NCBI RefSeq assembly: GCF_001194135.2
Contig: NC_068984.1
Location: forward strand, 58,876,988 to 58,929,557
Origin: Octopus bimaculoides
Lineage: Eukaryota
Length of the DNA: 52,570 bases
Direction: 5' to 3'
Shown here in pieces: positions 12,420-52,570 of the stretch (its first letter is position 1; each line of letters begins with the position of its first letter). Both the position numbers and the translations under genes were made by a program. The notes under the pieces were generated by a model. It made no database searches, was not told the origin of the DNA, and saw nothing but the letters and a program-made list of their open reading frames with translations.

Positions 12420-13617
12420 CAGAGTGCATAAGATATTTGAGGACAGATTTATGTTTATAGAAAAACATATATAATAACAGATAATAAAGTTATTATCAAA
12501 AAATAAACCTTCTTTTTTATAATGTTATTCAATAAATCCAGCTTCAGCTTCAACAACCGCTTCTATATGAGATCTAAATCATCTACATGCTCGAATCAAG
12601 TGGTCCTGGTTCATTTTGGACAATGTTCTGACTATGGCAGCTTTCAAAAAATCTTTGGTGTTATGGGCGTGTTCATTAACCTCTCTCTCAGTAATGCTCC
12701 AAATGTAATAGTCCAATATATTGAAATCTGGGGAATTAGGAGGCCAAATGTTAGGGGTTATGTAATCATGAAATTTTTCAGCCATCCATTCCTGTTACTA
12801 GAGCCATGTGTGTTAGTGCAGAGTCTTACTGAAACACATATGGCCTACCATTGCAGACACTGTCTATCCAGGGCTTAACAATTATTTCCAGGACCTCAAT
12901 GTAGATGGCAGTGTAACTCTAAGGCCTTGTGGAAAGAAGTAAGGAGGCATCACATGTCCTTCATTGCTGACACCCCCTAAAACCATGACAGTTGTAGGAA
13001 ATTTTGTATGCATAACACTTGGAACTTCAGAAGGGTCTGCAGATAACTATCTGTCATTTCTTCCATTAACTTTTTGATTTTGGTCGAAATTTTTCTCATT
13101 TGAGAAAAACCAAATCAAATCTTCTGTTGGGTTTTTAAGTTTGTTTAAGTGCCTTTAATATCTGATGTAGTGATTTTCTTTTGCTTTTTCTGACAAATTG
13201 ACCTTTCTTCATCATATTAGACTTATATCTGATGTCTTCATGGACAACATTTCTGACTGTTCTTTCTGACACATGGAGATCTTTTGCAATTGAGCTCATG
13301 GACTTTGTAATCAATGGTCTGTTGAACTTGCTGGATAAATTCAGGTGTTCTGATGATTTCAGAGCATTTAGAATGCTTTTTATGCTTTGATACTGGTGAT
13401 ACGTTTCCATCTTCAGTCTCTAGCTCCTTACAAACTTTGTAAGGATATTTTTAAATCGCTATGCTCAGCCTTGATAACCACAATAACAGCATGCCTCTTC
13501 ATTTCTTGAGTATGCTGAAGGTCTGCCATTATTATTTTCTGAAACAAAGACTATAAAGAGCAAAAAATGCAGCAATGACCCCCAAAAGGTATGTCCTCAA
13601 ATACCTTACACACCCTG
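12420..13617 (-). mobile_element. Near full-length decayed Tc1/mariner DNA transposon
   Basis: TIRs cagagtgcataagatatttgaggaca / tgtcctcaaataccttacacaccctg, TA flanks; ORF remnants 13135-13410 (HTH-like SIAKDLHVSERTVRNVVHED) and 12579-12785 (WPPNSPDFNILDYYIW); stops and frameshifts. Confidence 0.9.
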
Positions 13618-17723: not shown

Positions 17724-17789
17724 CATCATCATCATCATCATCATCGTTTAACGCCTTCCATGCTAGCAAAACTCTCCCTTTAAATTACA

Positions 17790-18521: not shown

Positions 18522-18690
18522 TTTTGATATTCATACATTACCTCCTTGTGTGTGTGTGTACAAATGCATGTGTCAGCAGCAGCATTTAGCATCCGTTTTC
18601 CACGCTTTGATATTCATACATTACCTCTTTGTGTGTGTGTGTGAGCACACGTGTGCCTGCAGCAGCATTTAGCATCTGTTTTCCATGCTG
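18522..18690. repeat. Local ~84-bp tandem duplication
   Basis: tttgatattcatacattacctc..(tg)n..gcagcagcatttagcatc occurs twice in tandem. Confidence 0.8.
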
Positions 18691-19019
18691 GCATGGGTTA
18701 GATGTTTGGACTGGAATCGGTAAGCCAGAGAGCTGTACCAAGCTGTAGTCTGGTTTGGCTTGGTTTCTACAACTGGATGCCCTTCCTAATGCCAACCACT
18801 CCAAGGATGTAGTGAGTTCTAGGAAGGGAATCCAGCTGTAGAAACCAAGCCAAGTCAGATTGGAGCCTGGCACATATATATATATATTCATTTTCATATC
18901 TAGTTTTGTACTGACCAGATTTCTTCATTAATATATACTACCTACAACATTATAATTTATGCTTTGTGTTCCATCTTTAGAAATAAATACCCTTGAGGAC
19001 ACACTATTTTCCAAGTCAT

Positions 19020-21215: not shown

Positions 21216-22138
21216 TTGATACCATTTCTAAGGGCATCAGTAATATAAGCCAAATGAAATAGTTTATACTTGAGAACTGGGAAACTTGGTTATGGTTATT
21301 GTTCACTGGGAATTGACTGCAGAACACTCAATAAAATATTAGAATTAAATATCTACATTTCTAGAATGAAATGTGAAGCAGTAGAGTAGAGCATTAAGCA
21401 TTTGTGTTAAAAATAAAGGGTCCATGTTCAAATCCATCTCAAAGTAGTAGTATTTTCAATACAACATTATTATCAACATGGCAACCAGACTGTTTTGATC
21501 AAAAGAGTCAAACACTAATATTTACAAATTATTTTGGTCTAAATAGTATTGATGATATTTGTTTCTATCACATAATATAAGCAGAGGAATGAGCCATGCT
21601 CAAGGCCTTTACAAGCCCTCCAAGTGTGGTGAGATTGATTCAGTTGATTTTCTTGAAAAACTGCAAGTTGATGGCTGTGAAAACAACATAGGCAGTGTGG
21701 CATAATTTTACACTATCTAAAACTGGTGTTGCTATTTATGCTGTTTATGCTCTGTAACTTAGCTTCTTAACAAACAAAGAATGATAAAATGTTTGAAATA
21801 GGTACTAGGGTCAATACAATTGACTAAACCCTTGAAGCCAACACCACCACAACAGAGTCACATGCCAATAACTAGAAACAGTAAAAGAATAAATGAATAT
21901 ATTTGTTAATTTATGACATGGTGGTTAAGAATACTGAAAATTTGTATGAGATATTGAAGTTTTAAAATTTTGGATTGAGCTAAACTGGTTGTTGTGCATA
22001 CCATAAAGTATGTCTTCTTTTGTGTAAAATATAGCATTAAATATTTTTATAGTTGTGTACAGGAAAATATTTCATTCTTCAAGTTTTATGAGCCCCATAA
22101 AATAGTATCGTTCCTACATCTGGGATGTAGGAACAGAT

Positions 22139-22240
22139 ATTCTGCACTAGCAGACATTCTGCACTAGCAGACATTCTGCACTAGCAGACATTCTGCACTA
22201 GCAGACATTCTGCACTAGCAGACATTCTGCACTAGCAGAA
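22139..22240. repeat. Six tandem copies of a 17-bp unit attctgcactagcagac
   Basis: Five perfect copies, sixth differs at its last base. Confidence 0.95.
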
Positions 22241-31499: not shown

Positions 31500-31602
31500 G
31501 TGTGAGCTTCAGTAATACATATACTAAAATTGGAATGATACAGAGATTATCATGGCCCCTGTATAAGGATGACATGCAAATTCATGAAGCATTTCATATT
31601 TT
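31500..31602 (+). pseudogene. U6: U6 snRNA pseudogene
   Basis: cttcagtaatacatatactaaaattggaatgatacagagattatcatggcccctgtataaggatgacatgcaaattcatgaagcatttcatatttt aligns over the length of canonical U6, with CpG transitions and a deletion next to the ACAGAGA box; (TG)n lies directly upstream. Confidence 0.9.
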
Positions 31603-31677
31603 CTGAATAGTTGTGCTCTGGCATGGCTTACAGCCCTTGAGGTGGGACACAAAAAGGAAAGAAAGGAAATGCATGTA

Positions 31678-31991: not shown

Positions 31992-32087
<96 letters not shown>

Positions 32088-32170
32088 TATATATATATAT
32101 ATATATACACACACATTACAGACACACACAAACACACATTATATATACACACACACACACACACATATAT
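31992..32170. repeat. (CA)n/(TA)n microsatellite
   Basis: Long CA run; source of several artefact ORFs. Confidence 0.95.
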
Positions 32171-32326
32171 ATAGGAAAATTATAGTGATCAACTAAACTT
32201 GACTAAGGGTGTGAATAGCACCTACATTGCTAGATATAGGAGCTAAAATGCTCCAATGCTGTTACAAAGCACATAATATATACTCTGATAGGGGCTGCAA
32301 TCGCCCTGAGCACCTAACAGAGAATT

Positions 32327-32378
32327 CCTTAGACTGACCGGCCAGTTTTAGCTCTTTCGATAGCCATCTTCAGTAAAG
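32327..32378 (-). ncRNA. Type I hammerhead in array unit 1 (G12 changed to A)
   Basis: Minus: CTTTA-CTGAAGA-TGGCT-atcgaaag-AGCT-AAA-ACTGG-CCGG-TCAGT-C^TAAGG. Confidence 0.75.
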
Positions 32379-32810
32379 CCAGCTCATTCAGTTGATTCCG
32401 AGCTAGCTTGCTTATCAGAGTAAATATACTCACCATAAAAATCTAGCAGATTGCTAATGTGTATACAAAAAAAATTCAATAAAAACAGCTGTTTACAACA
32501 TTATACCTTAAAGGGAAATCAACTAAACTTGACTAAGGGTGTAAATAACATCTACATTGCTAGAAACAGGAGCTAAAATGTTCCAATGCTATTGCAGAGT
32601 ACATAACATATACTCTGATAGGGACTACAATCTCCCTGAACACTGAACCAAGACTTCCTTGGACTGACCTTTATGGTATAATGCTGCAAACAGCTGTTTT
32701 TATTAATCTTTGCATGTACATCAGTGATCTGCTAAACCATCCATAGATTTTTATGGTGAGTGTATACACTCTGATAGATGAGCTAGCCCAGAATCAACTG
32801 AACGAGCTGG

Positions 32811-32860
32811 CCTTACTGAAGATGGAAGGTAAGAGCTGAAACTGGCCGGTCAGTCTAAGG
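32811..32860 (+). ncRNA. Type I hammerhead in array unit 3 (core intact, stem II damaged)
   Basis: CCTTA-CTGAAGA-TGGaaggtaagAGCT-GAA-ACTGG-CCGG-TCAGT-C^TAAGG; predicted cleavage after 32855 (GUC). Confidence 0.8.
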
Positions 32861-33149
32861 AGTTCTTGGTTCAGGGTGATTGCAGCCGCTATCAGAGTAT
32901 TTGCTATGTGCTTTGTAACAGCATTCAAGCATTTTAGCTCCTGTTTCTAGCAATGCAGGTGTTATTCACACCCTTAGTCAAGTTTAGTTTGACAGCTATA
33001 ATTTTCCTTTATGACATAACATTACAAACAGCTGTTTTTATTAATTTTTTGTATACACATTAATGATCTGCTAAATCATCCATAGATATTTATGGTGAAT
33101 ATATACACTCTGATAGGCAAGCTAGCCTGGAATCAACCGAATGGGCTCG

Positions 33150-33201
33150 CCGTACTGAAGATGGCTACGGAAAAAACCAAAACTGGCCGGTCAGTCTCAG
33201 G
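33150..33201 (+). ncRNA. Type I hammerhead in array unit 4 (G12 changed to A, stem I damaged)
   Basis: CCGTA-CTGAAGA-TGGCTacggaaaAAACC-AAA-ACTGG-CCGG-TCAGT-C^TCAGG. Confidence 0.7.
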
Positions 33202-33414
33202 AATCCTCAGTTTGGTGTTCAGAGCAATTGCAGCACCAACAGAGTATATGTTATGTGCTTTATAACAGCATTGGAGCATTTTAGCTCCTATTTCTAGTAA
33301 TGTAGGTATTATTCACACCCTTAGTCAAGTTTAGCTTGACAACTATAATTTTCTTTTACGGTATAACATTGCAAACAGCTGTTTTTATTAATTGTATACA
33401 TATATATATCAGAT

Positions 33415-33515
33415 TGGAGCCTGGTGTAGCCATCTGGTTTCACCAGTCCTCAGTCAAATCGTCCAACCCATGCTAGCATGGAAAGCGGACGTTAAACGAC
33501 GACGACGACGACGAT
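33415..33515 (+). mobile_element. RTE-type 3' tail fragment
   Basis: ccaacccatgctagcatggaaagcggacgttaaa followed by (cga)n; same 3' end as the RTE relic at 24150-25431. Confidence 0.75.
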
Positions 33516-34609
33516 ATATATANNNNNNNNNNNNNNNNNNNNNNNNNNNNNNNNNNNNNNNNNNNNNNNNNNNNNNNNNNNNNNNNNNNNNNNNNNNNNN
33601 NNNNNNNNNNNNNNNNNNNNNNNNNNNNNNNNNNNNNNNNNNNNNNNNNNNNNNNNNNNNNNNNNNNNNNNNNNNNNNNNNNNNNNNNNNNNNNNNNNNN
33701 NNNNNNNNNNNNNNNNNNNNNNNNNNNNNNNNNNNNNNNNNNNNNNNNNNNNNNNNNNNNNNNNNNNNNNNNNNNNNNNNNNNNNNNNNNNNNNNNNNNN
33801 NNNNNNNNNNNNNNNNNNNNNNNNNNNNNNNNNNNNNNNNNNNNNNNNNNNNNNNNNNNNNNNNNNNNNNNNNNNNNNNNNNNNNNNNNNNNNNNNNNNN
33901 NNNNNNNNNNNNNNNNNNNNNNNNNNNNNNNNNNNNNNNNNNNNNNNNNNNNNNNNNNNNNNNNNNNNNNNNNNNNNNNNNNNNNNNNNNNNNNNNNNNN
34001 NNNNNNNNNNNNNNNNNNNNNNNNNNNNNNNNNNNNNNNNNNNNNNNNNNNNNNNNNNNNNNNNNNNNNNNNNNNNNNNNNNNNNNNNNNNNNNNNNNNN
34101 NNNNNNNNNNNNNNNNNNNNNNNNNNNNNNNNNNNNNNNNNNNNNNNNNNNNNNNNNNNNNNNNNNNNNNNNNNNNNNNNNNNNNNNNNNNNNNNNNNNN
34201 NNNNNNNNNNNNNNNNNNNNNNNNNNNNNNNNNNNNNNNNNNNNNNNNNNNAAAGGTCTCTGAATAAGGTTTGTTTAAGGATGTTGAACAAAACAACCAT
34301 GCTTACAAAGGTGAATTATTCAAACCCCAAAGAATTCCTCTCAACACATGACTATGATGCTCCCCCACTACTTCTGCTTGTGATCAGAGATGCACATATC
34401 GTCAGCCACCAAGGGACATGCTCAACTGGTTAAGGTCAAACAACTGACAAGCAAATCTGTGGTACTGAGCAGAATATTTGCTGTAGCCCATCTTTTTATA
34501 CCAAGACAAAACAATGTACATGATAACACTTCCAATCAATTAAGATCAGAAGCCATGAGAGCCACTGCCTGGTACTGCATCCGGGCATTTATTATTATTA
34601 TTATTATTA

Positions 34610-34995
34610 TTATATATCATTATCATGTGTCCATTTTCCATGCTAGCATGGGTTGATTGGTTTGACAGGAGTTGATCAGCTGAAGGGCTGTTCAGGCTCC
34701 ATGTCTGTTTTGGCATGGTTTCTATGGTTGAATGCCCTTCCTAATGCCAACCACTTTACAGAATGCACTGGGTGCTTACATGCAGCACCAGCACAGGTGC
34801 TTTTTACATAACACCAGCACTTAAGAACCCACAAGATTAGGGATGCTCAGCAAGGGATGAGCCTGTATGCAAGGGCAGCCATGCTTTTACTTAGCTTAAC
34901 ATATCTTTTCAAGCACAGCAAACTGCTAGGAGTCTCAGTCCCCTGTCATCCCCTCTGTGAGTCCCAACATTTGTAGGTCTTTTCTCACTACTTCA
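34610..34995 (-). mobile_element. RTE-tail-bearing repeat fragment
   Basis: ttttccatgctagcatgggttg...atgcccttcctaatgccaaccac; shared with 18670-18870, 41905-42170 and 52263-52570. Confidence 0.7.
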
Positions 34996-41904: not shown

Positions 41905-42170
41905 TGTTATCACTGTCATCATCATCATCATCATCATCGTTTTACATCCGCTTTCCATGCTGGCATGGGTTGGACGGTTTTATTGAGGACTGGTGAGCCA
42001 GATGCTGCAACAGACTCAATCTGATCTGGCAAAATTTCTACAGGTGGATGACCTTCCTAACGCCAATCACTCCAAGAGTGTAGCAGGTGCTTTTACGTGC
42101 TACCAGCACAAGGGCCAGTCAGGCGATTCTGGCAATGACCATGCTCAAAAGATGTTTTTCTACCTGACTG
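41905..42170 (-). mobile_element. RTE-tail-bearing repeat
   Basis: (cat)n cgtttacatccgctttccatgctggcatgggttggacgg. Confidence 0.75.
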
Positions 42171-52262: not shown

Positions 52263-52570
52263 CATCATCATCATCATCATCATCATCATCGTTTAACGTC
52301 CGCTTTCCATGCTAGCATGGGTTGGACGATTTGACTGGGGACTGGTGCAACCGGATGGCTACACCAGGCTCCAATCTAATTTGGCAGAGTTTCTACAGCT
52401 GGATGCCCTTCCTAATGCCAACTACTCAGAGAGTGTAGTGGGTGCTTTTACGTGTCACCCGCACGAAAACGGCCACGCTCGAAATGGTGTCTTTTATGTG
52501 CCACCCGCACAAGAGCCAGTCCAGGGGCACTGGCAACGATCTCGCTCGAAAACCCTTCAAGGCCAGTCAG
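52263..52570 (-). mobile_element. Young RTE-tail-bearing repeat running off the window
   Basis: (cat)n cgtttaacgtccgctttccatgctagcatgggttggacg, CpG-rich. Confidence 0.8.

What the first reader, a model, noticed from the sequence alone, without database searches (positions are those of the whole stretch)
32174..33400. Tandem array of ~340-bp monomers each carrying a type I hammerhead ribozyme: candidate cephalopod retrozyme/circRNA locus
Seen: three full and two partial monomers (periods 330, 338 and 347 bp). Each full monomer has CTGAAGA, stem II, (G/A)AAA, stem III ACTGG-CCGG-TCAGT and a GUC triplet; stem I is CCTTA/TAAGG in unit 3, has one G-U pair in unit 1 and is damaged in unit 4. There is no ORF. 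Known: non-LTR retrozymes and HHR satellites (Schistosoma SMalpha, newt satellite 2, tandem type I HHR repeats in several metazoans) are non-coding monomers of this size class; transcription through two HHRs releases a monomer that can circularise. Inference: this is such a family. The three cores differ at the position before AAAC (CCAAAAC, CTGAAAC, CTAAAAC), which is what CpG deamination of an ancestral active CCGAAAC would give. These copies look decayed, and active source copies may lie elsewhere. I do not know of this family being described in octopus.
Basis: partly seen in the sequence, partly recalled or inferred. Interest (0 to 1): 0.9.

Follow-up and report, generated by a model that had tools for sequence, protein, structure and literature searches.

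The report
Decayed hammerhead-ribozyme retroelement repeat cluster
This is an old, mutated and silent cluster of ~340-bp non-coding repeats whose ancestor carried a self-cleaving hammerhead ribozyme of the kind linked to Penelope-like retrotransposons, so it is a real but fairly ordinary genomic fossil and not an active circular-RNA locus.

Summary
Units 1 and 2 lie on the minus strand. Units 3 to 5 lie on the plus strand. Their 5' ends meet head-to-head at 32669, and the cluster sits between (CA)n/(TA)n and (TA)n.

Independent assemblies cover the inverted junction with no differences. Four other species labels hold the same junction at 90-97% identity, so the insertion is real and old.

All three local ribozymes are damaged. 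Units 1 and 4 have A at G12. Unit 3 keeps G12 but has only a 2-bp stem II. No Rfam hammerhead model scores them.

Genomic reads from related copies give this family majority: CCUUA-CUGANGA-U-GGCUA-CGGAAA-UAGCC-GAAA-CUGGCCGGUCAG-UC|UAAGG. It is a complete type I hammerhead. The extra base between A9 and G10.1 and the near-palindromic helix III are traits of Penelope-like-element hammerheads.

The layout also fits insertion by Penelope-like machinery: partial tandem, inverted 5'-truncated copy, microsatellite target.

The family is small, about 40-70 ribozyme copies. In the libraries sampled RNA is trace-level, with no ends at the cleavage site and no circular junctions.

Verdict: a decayed non-autonomous retrozyme-like element, a new member of a known kind.

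The parts
31993..32173 (.). (CA)n then (TA)n microsatellite that abuts the 3' end of the left, inverted arm. It is the presumed target sequence.
   Evidence: period 2, 85 copies. The flank reads ...CACACATATATATA|GGAAAATTATAG.
32175..32513 (-). Unit 1, a full monomer of 339 bp in minus orientation.
   Evidence: blastn gives 80.6% identity to U3 on the opposite strand. See also the alignment and inverted repeats I1, I3, I4 and I6.
32327..32378 (-). Unit 1 hammerhead remnant: CUUUA-CUGAAGA-U-GGCU..AGCU-AAAA-CUGGCCGGUCAG-UC|UAAGG. Position 12 is A (32349) and position 11.1 is U (32350). C17 is 32332.
   Evidence: it passes only the relaxed descriptor. Family reads carry G at 32349 and C at 32350 on the ribozyme strand.
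32514..32669 (-). Unit 2, a 5'-truncated monomer in minus orientation. It starts inside helix III (GGUCAGUC|CAAGG). It keeps the cleavage-site side but has no catalytic core.
32669..32670 (.). Head-to-head inversion junction where the 5' ends of the two arms meet.
   Evidence: Contigs of independent runs cover it with 0 differences: X1 covers 32324-32973, and X2, X7 and X12 cover 32324-32822. Four other species labels cover it at 90-97% identity.
32669..33006 (+). Unit 3, a full monomer of 338 bp in plus orientation.
32811..32860 (+). Unit 3 hammerhead remnant: CCUUA-CUGAAGA-U-GG..CU-GAAA-CUGGCCGGUCAG-UC|UAAGG. G12 is kept, position 11.1 is U, and a 2-nt deletion reduces stem II to 2 bp. The cleavage site is after 32855.
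   Evidence: the canonical fold is only -1.0 kcal/mol.
33007..33353 (+). Unit 4, a full monomer of 347 bp in plus orientation.
33150..33201 (+). Unit 4 hammerhead remnant. It has A12 (33179), a broken stem II 3' strand (33174, 33176) and a broken stem I (33152, 33198). The would-be cleavage site is after 33196.
   Evidence: it fails even the relaxed descriptor. Family reads restore all five positions.
33354..33397 (+). Unit 5, only the first ~45 bp of a monomer. It is the 3' end of the right arm and runs into (TA)n.
33397..33410 (.). Short (TA)n that abuts the 3' end of the right arm.

Best explanation
The cluster is the fossil of one old insertion of a small non-coding retroelement. Its source copies carried a type I hammerhead ribozyme. 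This makes it a non-LTR 'retrozyme'-like element, most likely a non-autonomous passenger of Penelope-like elements (PLEs).

Inferred life cycle of the source element:
- A multimeric transcript is cut after GUC by the hammerheads. They may act singly, or as dimers through the near-palindromic helix III.
- The ~340-nt monomers may be circularised by a host tRNA ligase.
- A PLE reverse transcriptase and GIY-YIG endonuclease copies multimeric or circular RNA into a TA-rich microsatellite.
- Priming from both target ends gives two arms of more than one unit each, whose 5' ends meet head-to-head.

Shown here:
- The anatomy of the locus.
- The reality and age of the inversion.
- The intact family consensus.
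- Decay of the local copies, transition-dominated and falling on the CpG of the core.
- Near-absence of RNA.

Inferred, not shown: self-cleavage, circularisation, dependence on PLEs and the twin-priming origin.

The locus itself is dead. U1 and U4 have A at G12, U3 has a 2-bp stem II, and no pair of working ribozymes flanks a monomer.
For: 1. Anatomy. Two arms in opposite orientation, of 1.5 and 2.1 units, have 3' ends that both abut (TA)n and 5' ends that meet at 32669. There is no ORF.

2. The inversion is real. Contigs from four independent runs cross it with 0 differences.

3. The insertion is old. Orthologous junction contigs occur in four other species labels at 97, 97, 93 and 90% identity. 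The units differ from each other by 13-19%, mostly by transitions.

4. Family consensus. Reads of related copies laid separately on U1 and on U4 give the same majority: CCUUA CUGA(A/C)GA U GGCUA CGGAAA UAGCC GAAA CUG(G/A)CCGGUCAG UC UAAGG.
- G12 is present in 76/107 reads (U1) and 51/81 reads (U4).
- Both stems are restored.
- The only polymorphic base listed (at 15-20% or more of reads) in the CUGANGA box in both read mappings is the free position N7; A9>G (12 of 80 reads) was listed only on U4.
- The G.U pair in helix III alternates with A-U in about 32% of copies.

5. The consensus passes a strict type I descriptor that had 0 hits in 20 Mb of random sequence.

6. [quoted passage not shown] Here they are 433 bp apart. 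The helix III self-duplex is 14 bp at -24.7 kcal/mol.

7. PLE insertion hallmarks described in PMC8557442 are present: partial tandems, an adjacent inverted 5'-truncated copy and a microsatellite target.

8. Other family loci also show tandem and head-to-head junctions.

9. GC content of 37-40% and a monomer of ~340 bp fit non-LTR retrozymes (PMC7229834).
Against: - No Rfam hammerhead model scores any local copy, and I could not run the models on the consensus.
- Nearest-neighbour folding of the consensus prefers a competing fold. The canonical fold is -13.1 kcal/mol against an MFE of -19.3, and stems II and III have ensemble probability of 0.06 or less.
- No reverse transcriptase or GIY-YIG ORF is in the window, and no link to an autonomous PLE was shown.
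- No target-site duplication can be read in the microsatellite flanks.
- The family is small. The monomer is a mosaic of modules with very unequal copy numbers, from roughly 5-8 to about 2500, so a complete monomer of this type may exist in only a handful of copies.
- Whether any intact ribozyme copy exists is unknown, because the consensus pools reads from many copies.
- The monomer RNA fold is no more stable than shuffles (z = -0.13).
- RNA is at trace level only.
Confidence: 0.7

Rival explanations
1. This locus is itself a working retrozyme. Transcription through two hammerheads would release a ~340-nt RNA that circularises.
For: U3 keeps every core nucleotide, G12 included. U3 and U4 are in tandem with cleavage sites 341 nt apart. 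Trace RNA contigs of family members exist.
Against: - U4 and U1 have A at G12, the general base. From established hammerhead biochemistry, G12A is strongly inactivating.
- U3 stem II is only 2 bp, and its canonical fold is -1.0 kcal/mol.
- In three RNA read sets there are 0 reads at 95% identity or more on the array and 0 depth on the U3 and U4 ribozymes. There are no ends at GUC and no back-joints.
- The RNA contig sets hold none of the locus's 31-letter index words; one 171-nt contig of depth 2.4 lies on 32365-32535 at about 95% identity.
Confidence: 0.03
2. The units are pseudo-LTR remnants of an autonomous Penelope-like element whose ORF has been deleted or lies in unassembled sequence. 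On this reading there is no separate non-autonomous family.
For: The hammerhead has PLE-type traits and the layout is PLE-like (PMC4209133, PMC8557442). An N gap lies at 33523-34251. Some related contigs are longer and match only in part, for example a 2259-nt contig with 357 nt matched.
Against: - The repeat period is 340 bp with 2.1 and 1.5 consecutive units and nothing coding between them.
- The right arm ends in (TA)n and an unrelated interspersed repeat before the gap begins.
- Other loci also repeat at ~325-331 bp.
Confidence: 0.12
3. It is a SINE-like hammerhead element, like Schistosoma SMalpha, mobilised by LINE machinery. The tandem and inverted layout would then come from later local duplication and inversion.
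For: The monomer shares a 45-nt core with a family of about 2500 copies and an 80-nt module with about 180 copies. Some relatives continue into A-rich sequence after the 5' module, although the loose ends at 33393 agree poorly.
Against: - No tRNA-like part was found, and there is no poly(A) at either 3' end of the array.
- Inverted 5'-truncated junctions recur at several family loci, which is unlikely from independent rearrangements.
- The ribozyme carries the PLE-type extra base.
Confidence: 0.1
4. It is an ordinary local duplication or low-copy satellite in which a hammerhead-like string arose by chance.
For: No Rfam hit. The consensus MFE is not the hammerhead fold. Copy number is low.
Against: - The strict motif had 0 hits in 20 Mb of random sequence.
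- The family consensus is a better hammerhead than any local copy, at exactly the positions that matter.
- Variation concentrates at the free N7 position and as a G.U/A-U exchange in helix III.
Confidence: 0.05

Closest known systems
Metazoan non-LTR retrozymes: tandem ~170-400-bp repeats with type I hammerheads in coral, mussel and axolotl (Cervera & de la Pena 2020, PMC7229834)
   Same: The monomer is non-coding, ~340 bp and low in GC (37-40%). It carries one type I hammerhead. Tandem copies occur at several loci. The family is heterogeneous.
   Different: - This is a small family of tens of ribozyme copies, against thousands to about 10^5.
- The local array is part inverted.
- No monomeric or circular RNA was detected.
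- The ribozyme has an extra U after A9 and a long (4-5 bp) near-palindromic helix III.
- No loop 1 / loop 2 tertiary contact motif was identified.
Hammerheads in the pseudo-LTRs of Penelope-like elements (Cervera & de la Pena 2014, PMC4209133), and PLE insertion architecture (Craig et al. 2021, PMC8557442)
   Same: [quoted passage not shown] Ribozymes lie on opposite strands a few hundred bp apart. The insertion is a partial tandem with an adjacent inverted 5'-truncated copy in a microsatellite.
   Different: - There is no reverse transcriptase / GIY-YIG ORF here.
- The unit is 340 bp, not kilobases.
- Helix II is 5 bp, not 7-8 bp.
- Helix III is present, whereas most metazoan PLE 'min-HHRs' lack it.
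Schistosoma SMalpha SINE-like hammerhead element, and newt satellite 2
   Same: Short non-coding repeats of a few hundred bp, each with a type I hammerhead. A dimeric ribozyme through helix III is possible.
   Different: The comparison rests on the literature and my own knowledge only, not on sequence. No sequence similarity was tested, and those families are high-copy and transcribed.

Membership tests
Hammerhead ribozyme, type I | Conserved core: C3 U4 G5 A6 N7 G8 A9, G12 A13 A14, the A15.1-U16.1 pair and H17. | tested here: met
   Met by the family consensus rebuilt from reads and by U3. It is NOT met by U1 or U4, which have A12.
Hammerhead ribozyme, type I | Three helices around the core, with helix I open. 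| tested here: met
   In the consensus, helix I is 5 bp, helix II is 5 bp and helix III is 4-5 bp. In the local copies U3 helix II is 2 bp and U4 helix I is broken.
Hammerhead ribozyme, type I | Score at or above the gathering threshold of an Rfam hammerhead covariance model. | tested here: not met
   No hammerhead family is listed at gathering score, or at E<=10 even on 81- and 84-nt stretches. The consensus could not be submitted to the tool.
Hammerhead ribozyme, type I | Site-specific self-cleavage after H17. | not testable with these tools
   This needs in vitro transcription. RNA reads show no accumulation of ends at GUC, but depth there is close to zero.
Non-LTR retrozyme (PMC7229834) | Short tandem repeats of ~300 bp, each with a type I hammerhead, non-coding and low in GC. 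| tested here: met
   The caveat is that one arm is inverted and the local ribozymes are decayed.
Non-LTR retrozyme (PMC7229834) | Multiple genomic loci with tandem copies. | tested here: met
   Diverged contigs cross the monomer end-to-start boundary, and there are joints that go back 325-331 bp. Copy number is low.
Non-LTR retrozyme (PMC7229834) | Expression as monomer-length linear and circular RNA. | tested here: inconclusive
   Only trace RNA from relatives was found, with no circular junctions. Only about 6% of each read set was sampled, and the RNA selection method of the libraries is unknown.
PLE-type hammerhead and PLE-mediated insertion | [quoted passage not shown] | tested here: met
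   The consensus reads CUGANGA-U-GGCUA...UAGCC-GAAA. Helix III is ACUG(G/A)CCGGUCAGU and is a perfect palindrome in about 32% of copies. The feature list comes from PMC4209133.
PLE-type hammerhead and PLE-mediated insertion | A partial tandem with an adjacent inverted 5'-truncated copy, and a microsatellite target. | tested here: met
   The feature list comes from PMC8557442.
PLE-type hammerhead and PLE-mediated insertion | Association with a PLE reverse transcriptase / GIY-YIG ORF, either in cis or through a demonstrated autonomous partner. | tested here: not met
   No such ORF is in the window. A partner elsewhere in the genome could not be searched for with these tools.

The most novel reading that the evidence does not exclude
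Intact source copies of this family may still exist in the genome and make ~340-nt self-cleaved, circularised RNAs in some tissue. They would use a PLE-type hammerhead with a full near-palindromic helix III that can switch between monomer and dimer modes.
Probability: 0.15. Interest if true: 0.45.

Novelty: new member of a known kind. Interest (0 to 1): 0.27.

Why it matters
The finding adds one more animal lineage to the known spread of hammerhead-bearing retroelements. The locus also combines, in one place, a retrozyme-like monomer, a PLE-type ribozyme core and the PLE-type tandem/inverted insertion into a microsatellite. [quoted passage not shown] The practical value is for annotation: Rfam models miss this ribozyme type, so such repeats go unlabelled. 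It does not open a new question, because the locus is dead and the mechanism is already known in outline.

Tried and rejected
- Rfam scans of the whole window, of the 1.6-kb region and of two ~80-nt stretches found no hammerhead family. The only hit was a U6-like gene.
- Two pattern scans of metagenome contigs for the consensus ribozyme returned 0 matches. No related loci could therefore be fetched, and no covariance model or covariation count on independent copies was possible.
This also blocked a search for an empty orthologous site and a target-site duplication.
- An exact-protein look-up, tried to identify the organism, found nothing on record. Run and organism names are coded, so 'octopus' stays unverified.
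- The tRNA scan found none.
- The whole-monomer RNA fold has z = -0.13, so there is no sign of the rod-like stability typical of retrozyme circles. The copy folded is decayed.
- MFE folding of the consensus does not give the canonical hammerhead. I treat this as a caution rather than a refutation, because the competing fold needs long-range pairs and the model ignores tertiary contacts.
- A scan for a PLE ORF in the window found nothing coding.

Full report
**Observation**

The region holds five homologous pieces of a ~340-bp unit:
- U1, 32175-32513
- U2, 32514-32669
- U3, 32669-33006
- U4, 33007-33353
- U5, 33354-33397

Tandem Repeats Finder reports only 32687-33393, with period 347 and 2.1 copies. 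The reason is that U1 and U2 are the reverse complement of U3-U5.

The layout is therefore <-U1 <-U2 | U3-> U4-> U5->, with the 5' ends of the two arms meeting at 32669. U2 is truncated inside helix III of the ribozyme. The 3' end of the left arm abuts (CA)n(TA)n at 31993-32173, and the 3' end of the right arm runs into (TA)n at 33397-33410.

No ORF above 57 aa lies inside the array. No other copy is in the window.

Gap-free pairwise identity between units is 81-87%. Transitions outnumber transversions about 3-5 to 1. GC content is 37-40%.

**The hammerhead strings**

- U3 (32811-32860, plus strand) reads CCUUA-CUGAAGA-U-GG..CU-GAAA-CUGGCCGGUCAG-UC|UAAGG. It keeps G12, but a 2-nt deletion leaves only 2 bp of stem II.
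- U1 (32327-32378, minus strand) has a 4-bp stem II but A at position 12.
- U4 (33150-33201, plus strand) has A12, a broken stem II and a broken stem I.

No Rfam hammerhead model reports any of them. This holds at gathering score, at E<=10 on 1.6 kb, and on 81- and 84-nt stretches.

With my own descriptor, only U3 and U1 pass a relaxed version, and nothing in the window passes the strict one. In 20 Mb of random sequence with the window's dinucleotide make-up there were 5 relaxed and 0 strict matches. The motif is not a chance match, but the local copies are defective.

**Is the inversion real, and how old is it?**

Contigs assembled independently from four runs of the same species label cover the junction with no differences. 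X1 covers 32324-32973, and X2, X7 and X12 cover 32324-32822.

Contigs from four other species labels cross the same junction at 97%, 97%, 93% and about 90% identity.

The structure is therefore not an assembly artefact. It predates the divergence of these species, which fits the 13-19% divergence between the units.

**The family consensus**

I laid genomic reads at 80% likeness or more on U1 alone and, separately, on U4 alone. Reads from related copies elsewhere in the genome outnumber those of the locus itself. Both mappings agree.

On U1, the majority letters on the ribozyme strand are:
- G at position 12 (76 of 107 reads)
- C at 11.1
- U and G/C changes that rebuild stem II
- C in stem I

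On U4, the majority letters restore:
- stem I (33152 G>T, 33198 C>A)
- the stem II 3' strand (33174 A>T, 33176 A>G)
- G12 (33179 A>G, 51 of 81 reads)

The consensus is CCUUA CUGA(A/C)GA U GGCUA CGGAAA UAGCC GAAA CUG(G/A)CCGGUCAG UC|UAAGG. It passes the strict descriptor.

The consensus is CpG-rich, and the local copies carry TG or CA at those sites.

Two further observations fit selection on source copies:
- The only base in the CUGANGA box listed as polymorphic (at 15-20% or more of reads) in both mappings is N7, the position that is free in hammerheads (32369 and 33159). A9>G (33161, 12 of 80 reads) was also listed, on U4 only.
- The G.U pair in helix III is A-U in about 32% of copies (32342 and 33186).

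**Which kind of hammerhead**

The consensus has one unpaired U between A9 and G10.1. Cervera and de la Pena (PMC4209133) list several recurring traits of the hammerheads in Penelope-like elements:
- this extra nucleotide
- the G10.1-C11.1 pair
- a 4-5-bp helix I
- a palindromic helix III
- paired motifs on opposite strands 100-700 bp apart

Here helix III, ACUGGCCGGUCAGU, is one G.U short of a perfect palindrome. It can form a 14-bp self-duplex of -24.7 kcal/mol. The U1 and U3 ribozymes face away from each other, 433 nt apart.

Craig et al. (PMC8557442) describe PLE insertions as 5'-truncated partial tandems, often with an inverted 5'-truncated copy alongside, and biased towards microsatellites such as (TA)n. 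The locus matches all three features.

Other family loci also show head-to-head junctions, one of them inside the CUGAAGA box, and tandem junctions.

**Copy number and mosaic make-up**

I scaled contig word depth by single-copy depth, which is about 55 in X1. The estimates are (with the same profile in other species):
- the ribozyme: about 40-70 copies
- the linker 32421-32502: about 5-8 copies
- an 80-nt 5' module: about 180 copies
- a 45-nt core in the 3' part: about 2500 copies

The complete monomer is therefore rare, and its modules are shared with other repeat families.

**RNA**

Three RNA read sets, each with about 12 million reads sampled, gave these results:
- no read at 95% identity or more on the array
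- zero depth on the U3 and U4 ribozymes
- at most five reads from relatives on U1
- no joints
- no pile-up of ends at GUC

Four RNA contig sets hold a few low-depth (2-5x) contigs of relatives, including tandem and inverted forms. That pattern suggests read-through transcripts rather than an abundant small RNA. The selection method of the libraries is unknown, so a non-polyadenylated circle could have been missed.

**Cautions**

- Nearest-neighbour folding of the consensus prefers a competitor in which ACUGA of the core pairs with UCAGU of helix III. The canonical fold is -13.1 kcal/mol against an MFE of -19.3.
- The monomer fold is no more stable than shuffles.
- No PLE ORF is in the window.
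- No relatives could be fetched from other collections.
- The existence of any single intact copy is unproven.
- The organism could not be identified (names are coded).

**Conclusion**

The cluster is best read as one ancient insertion of a non-autonomous, retrozyme-like element with a PLE-type hammerhead. It was probably made by PLE machinery from a multimeric or circular RNA, with priming from both target ends, and has since decayed.

It cannot release a monomer today. G12, which is A in U1 and U4, is the general base of the ribozyme; that is established knowledge and was not tested here. The only copy that keeps G12 (U3) lacks a usable stem II.

This is a new member of a known kind, of modest interest.

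Noticed in passing
window 31500-31603 (+): A U6 snRNA-like sequence scores 81.7 bits against a gathering score of 44. It has a 3-nt deletion just after ACAGAGA, and the AGC triad reads AUC, so it is probably a U6 pseudogene. It lies about 390 bp upstream of the (CA)n that flanks the array.
   Followed up: partly
window 32216-32262 (also 32546-32590, 32918-32964, 33265-33307): A 45-nt core inside each monomer (ribozyme strand GCATTGGAGCATTTTAGCTCCT.T.TCTAGCAATG.AGGTG, containing a GGAGC/GCTCC hairpin) is present in roughly 2500 genomic copies, against about 40-70 for the ribozyme. It is transcribed and is equally abundant in the other species. It belongs to a much larger repeat family whose similarity fades on both sides of the core.
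   Followed up: partly
window 33036-33117 (and 32698-32777): The 5' module of the monomer is present in about 180 genomic copies. Some relatives continue into A-rich sequence after ...TTATTAAT, so this module may end another kind of element.
   Followed up: no
window 33408-33515: The sequence just right of the array is a copy of an interspersed repeat that ends in (GAC)n. Five further copies or fragments lie in the window: 52273-52380, 41921-42025, 18668-18752, 34629-34666 and 17728-17768.
   Followed up: partly
window 13135-13410 (-): A 91-aa ORF has a helix-turn-helix-like stretch (...SERTVRNVVHEDIRYKS...) that resembles the N-terminus of a Tc1/mariner transposase. No exact product is on record.
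   Followed up: no
whole window: CpG is strongly depleted (observed/expected 0.19, GC 33.5%). There are eight N gaps and very many (CA)n, (TA)n and similar microsatellites. This looks like a draft animal genome assembly.
   Followed up: no
window 22134-22239: A near-perfect 17-bp tandem repeat, CAGACATTCTGCACTAG, occurs in 6.2 copies at 98% matches.
   Followed up: no
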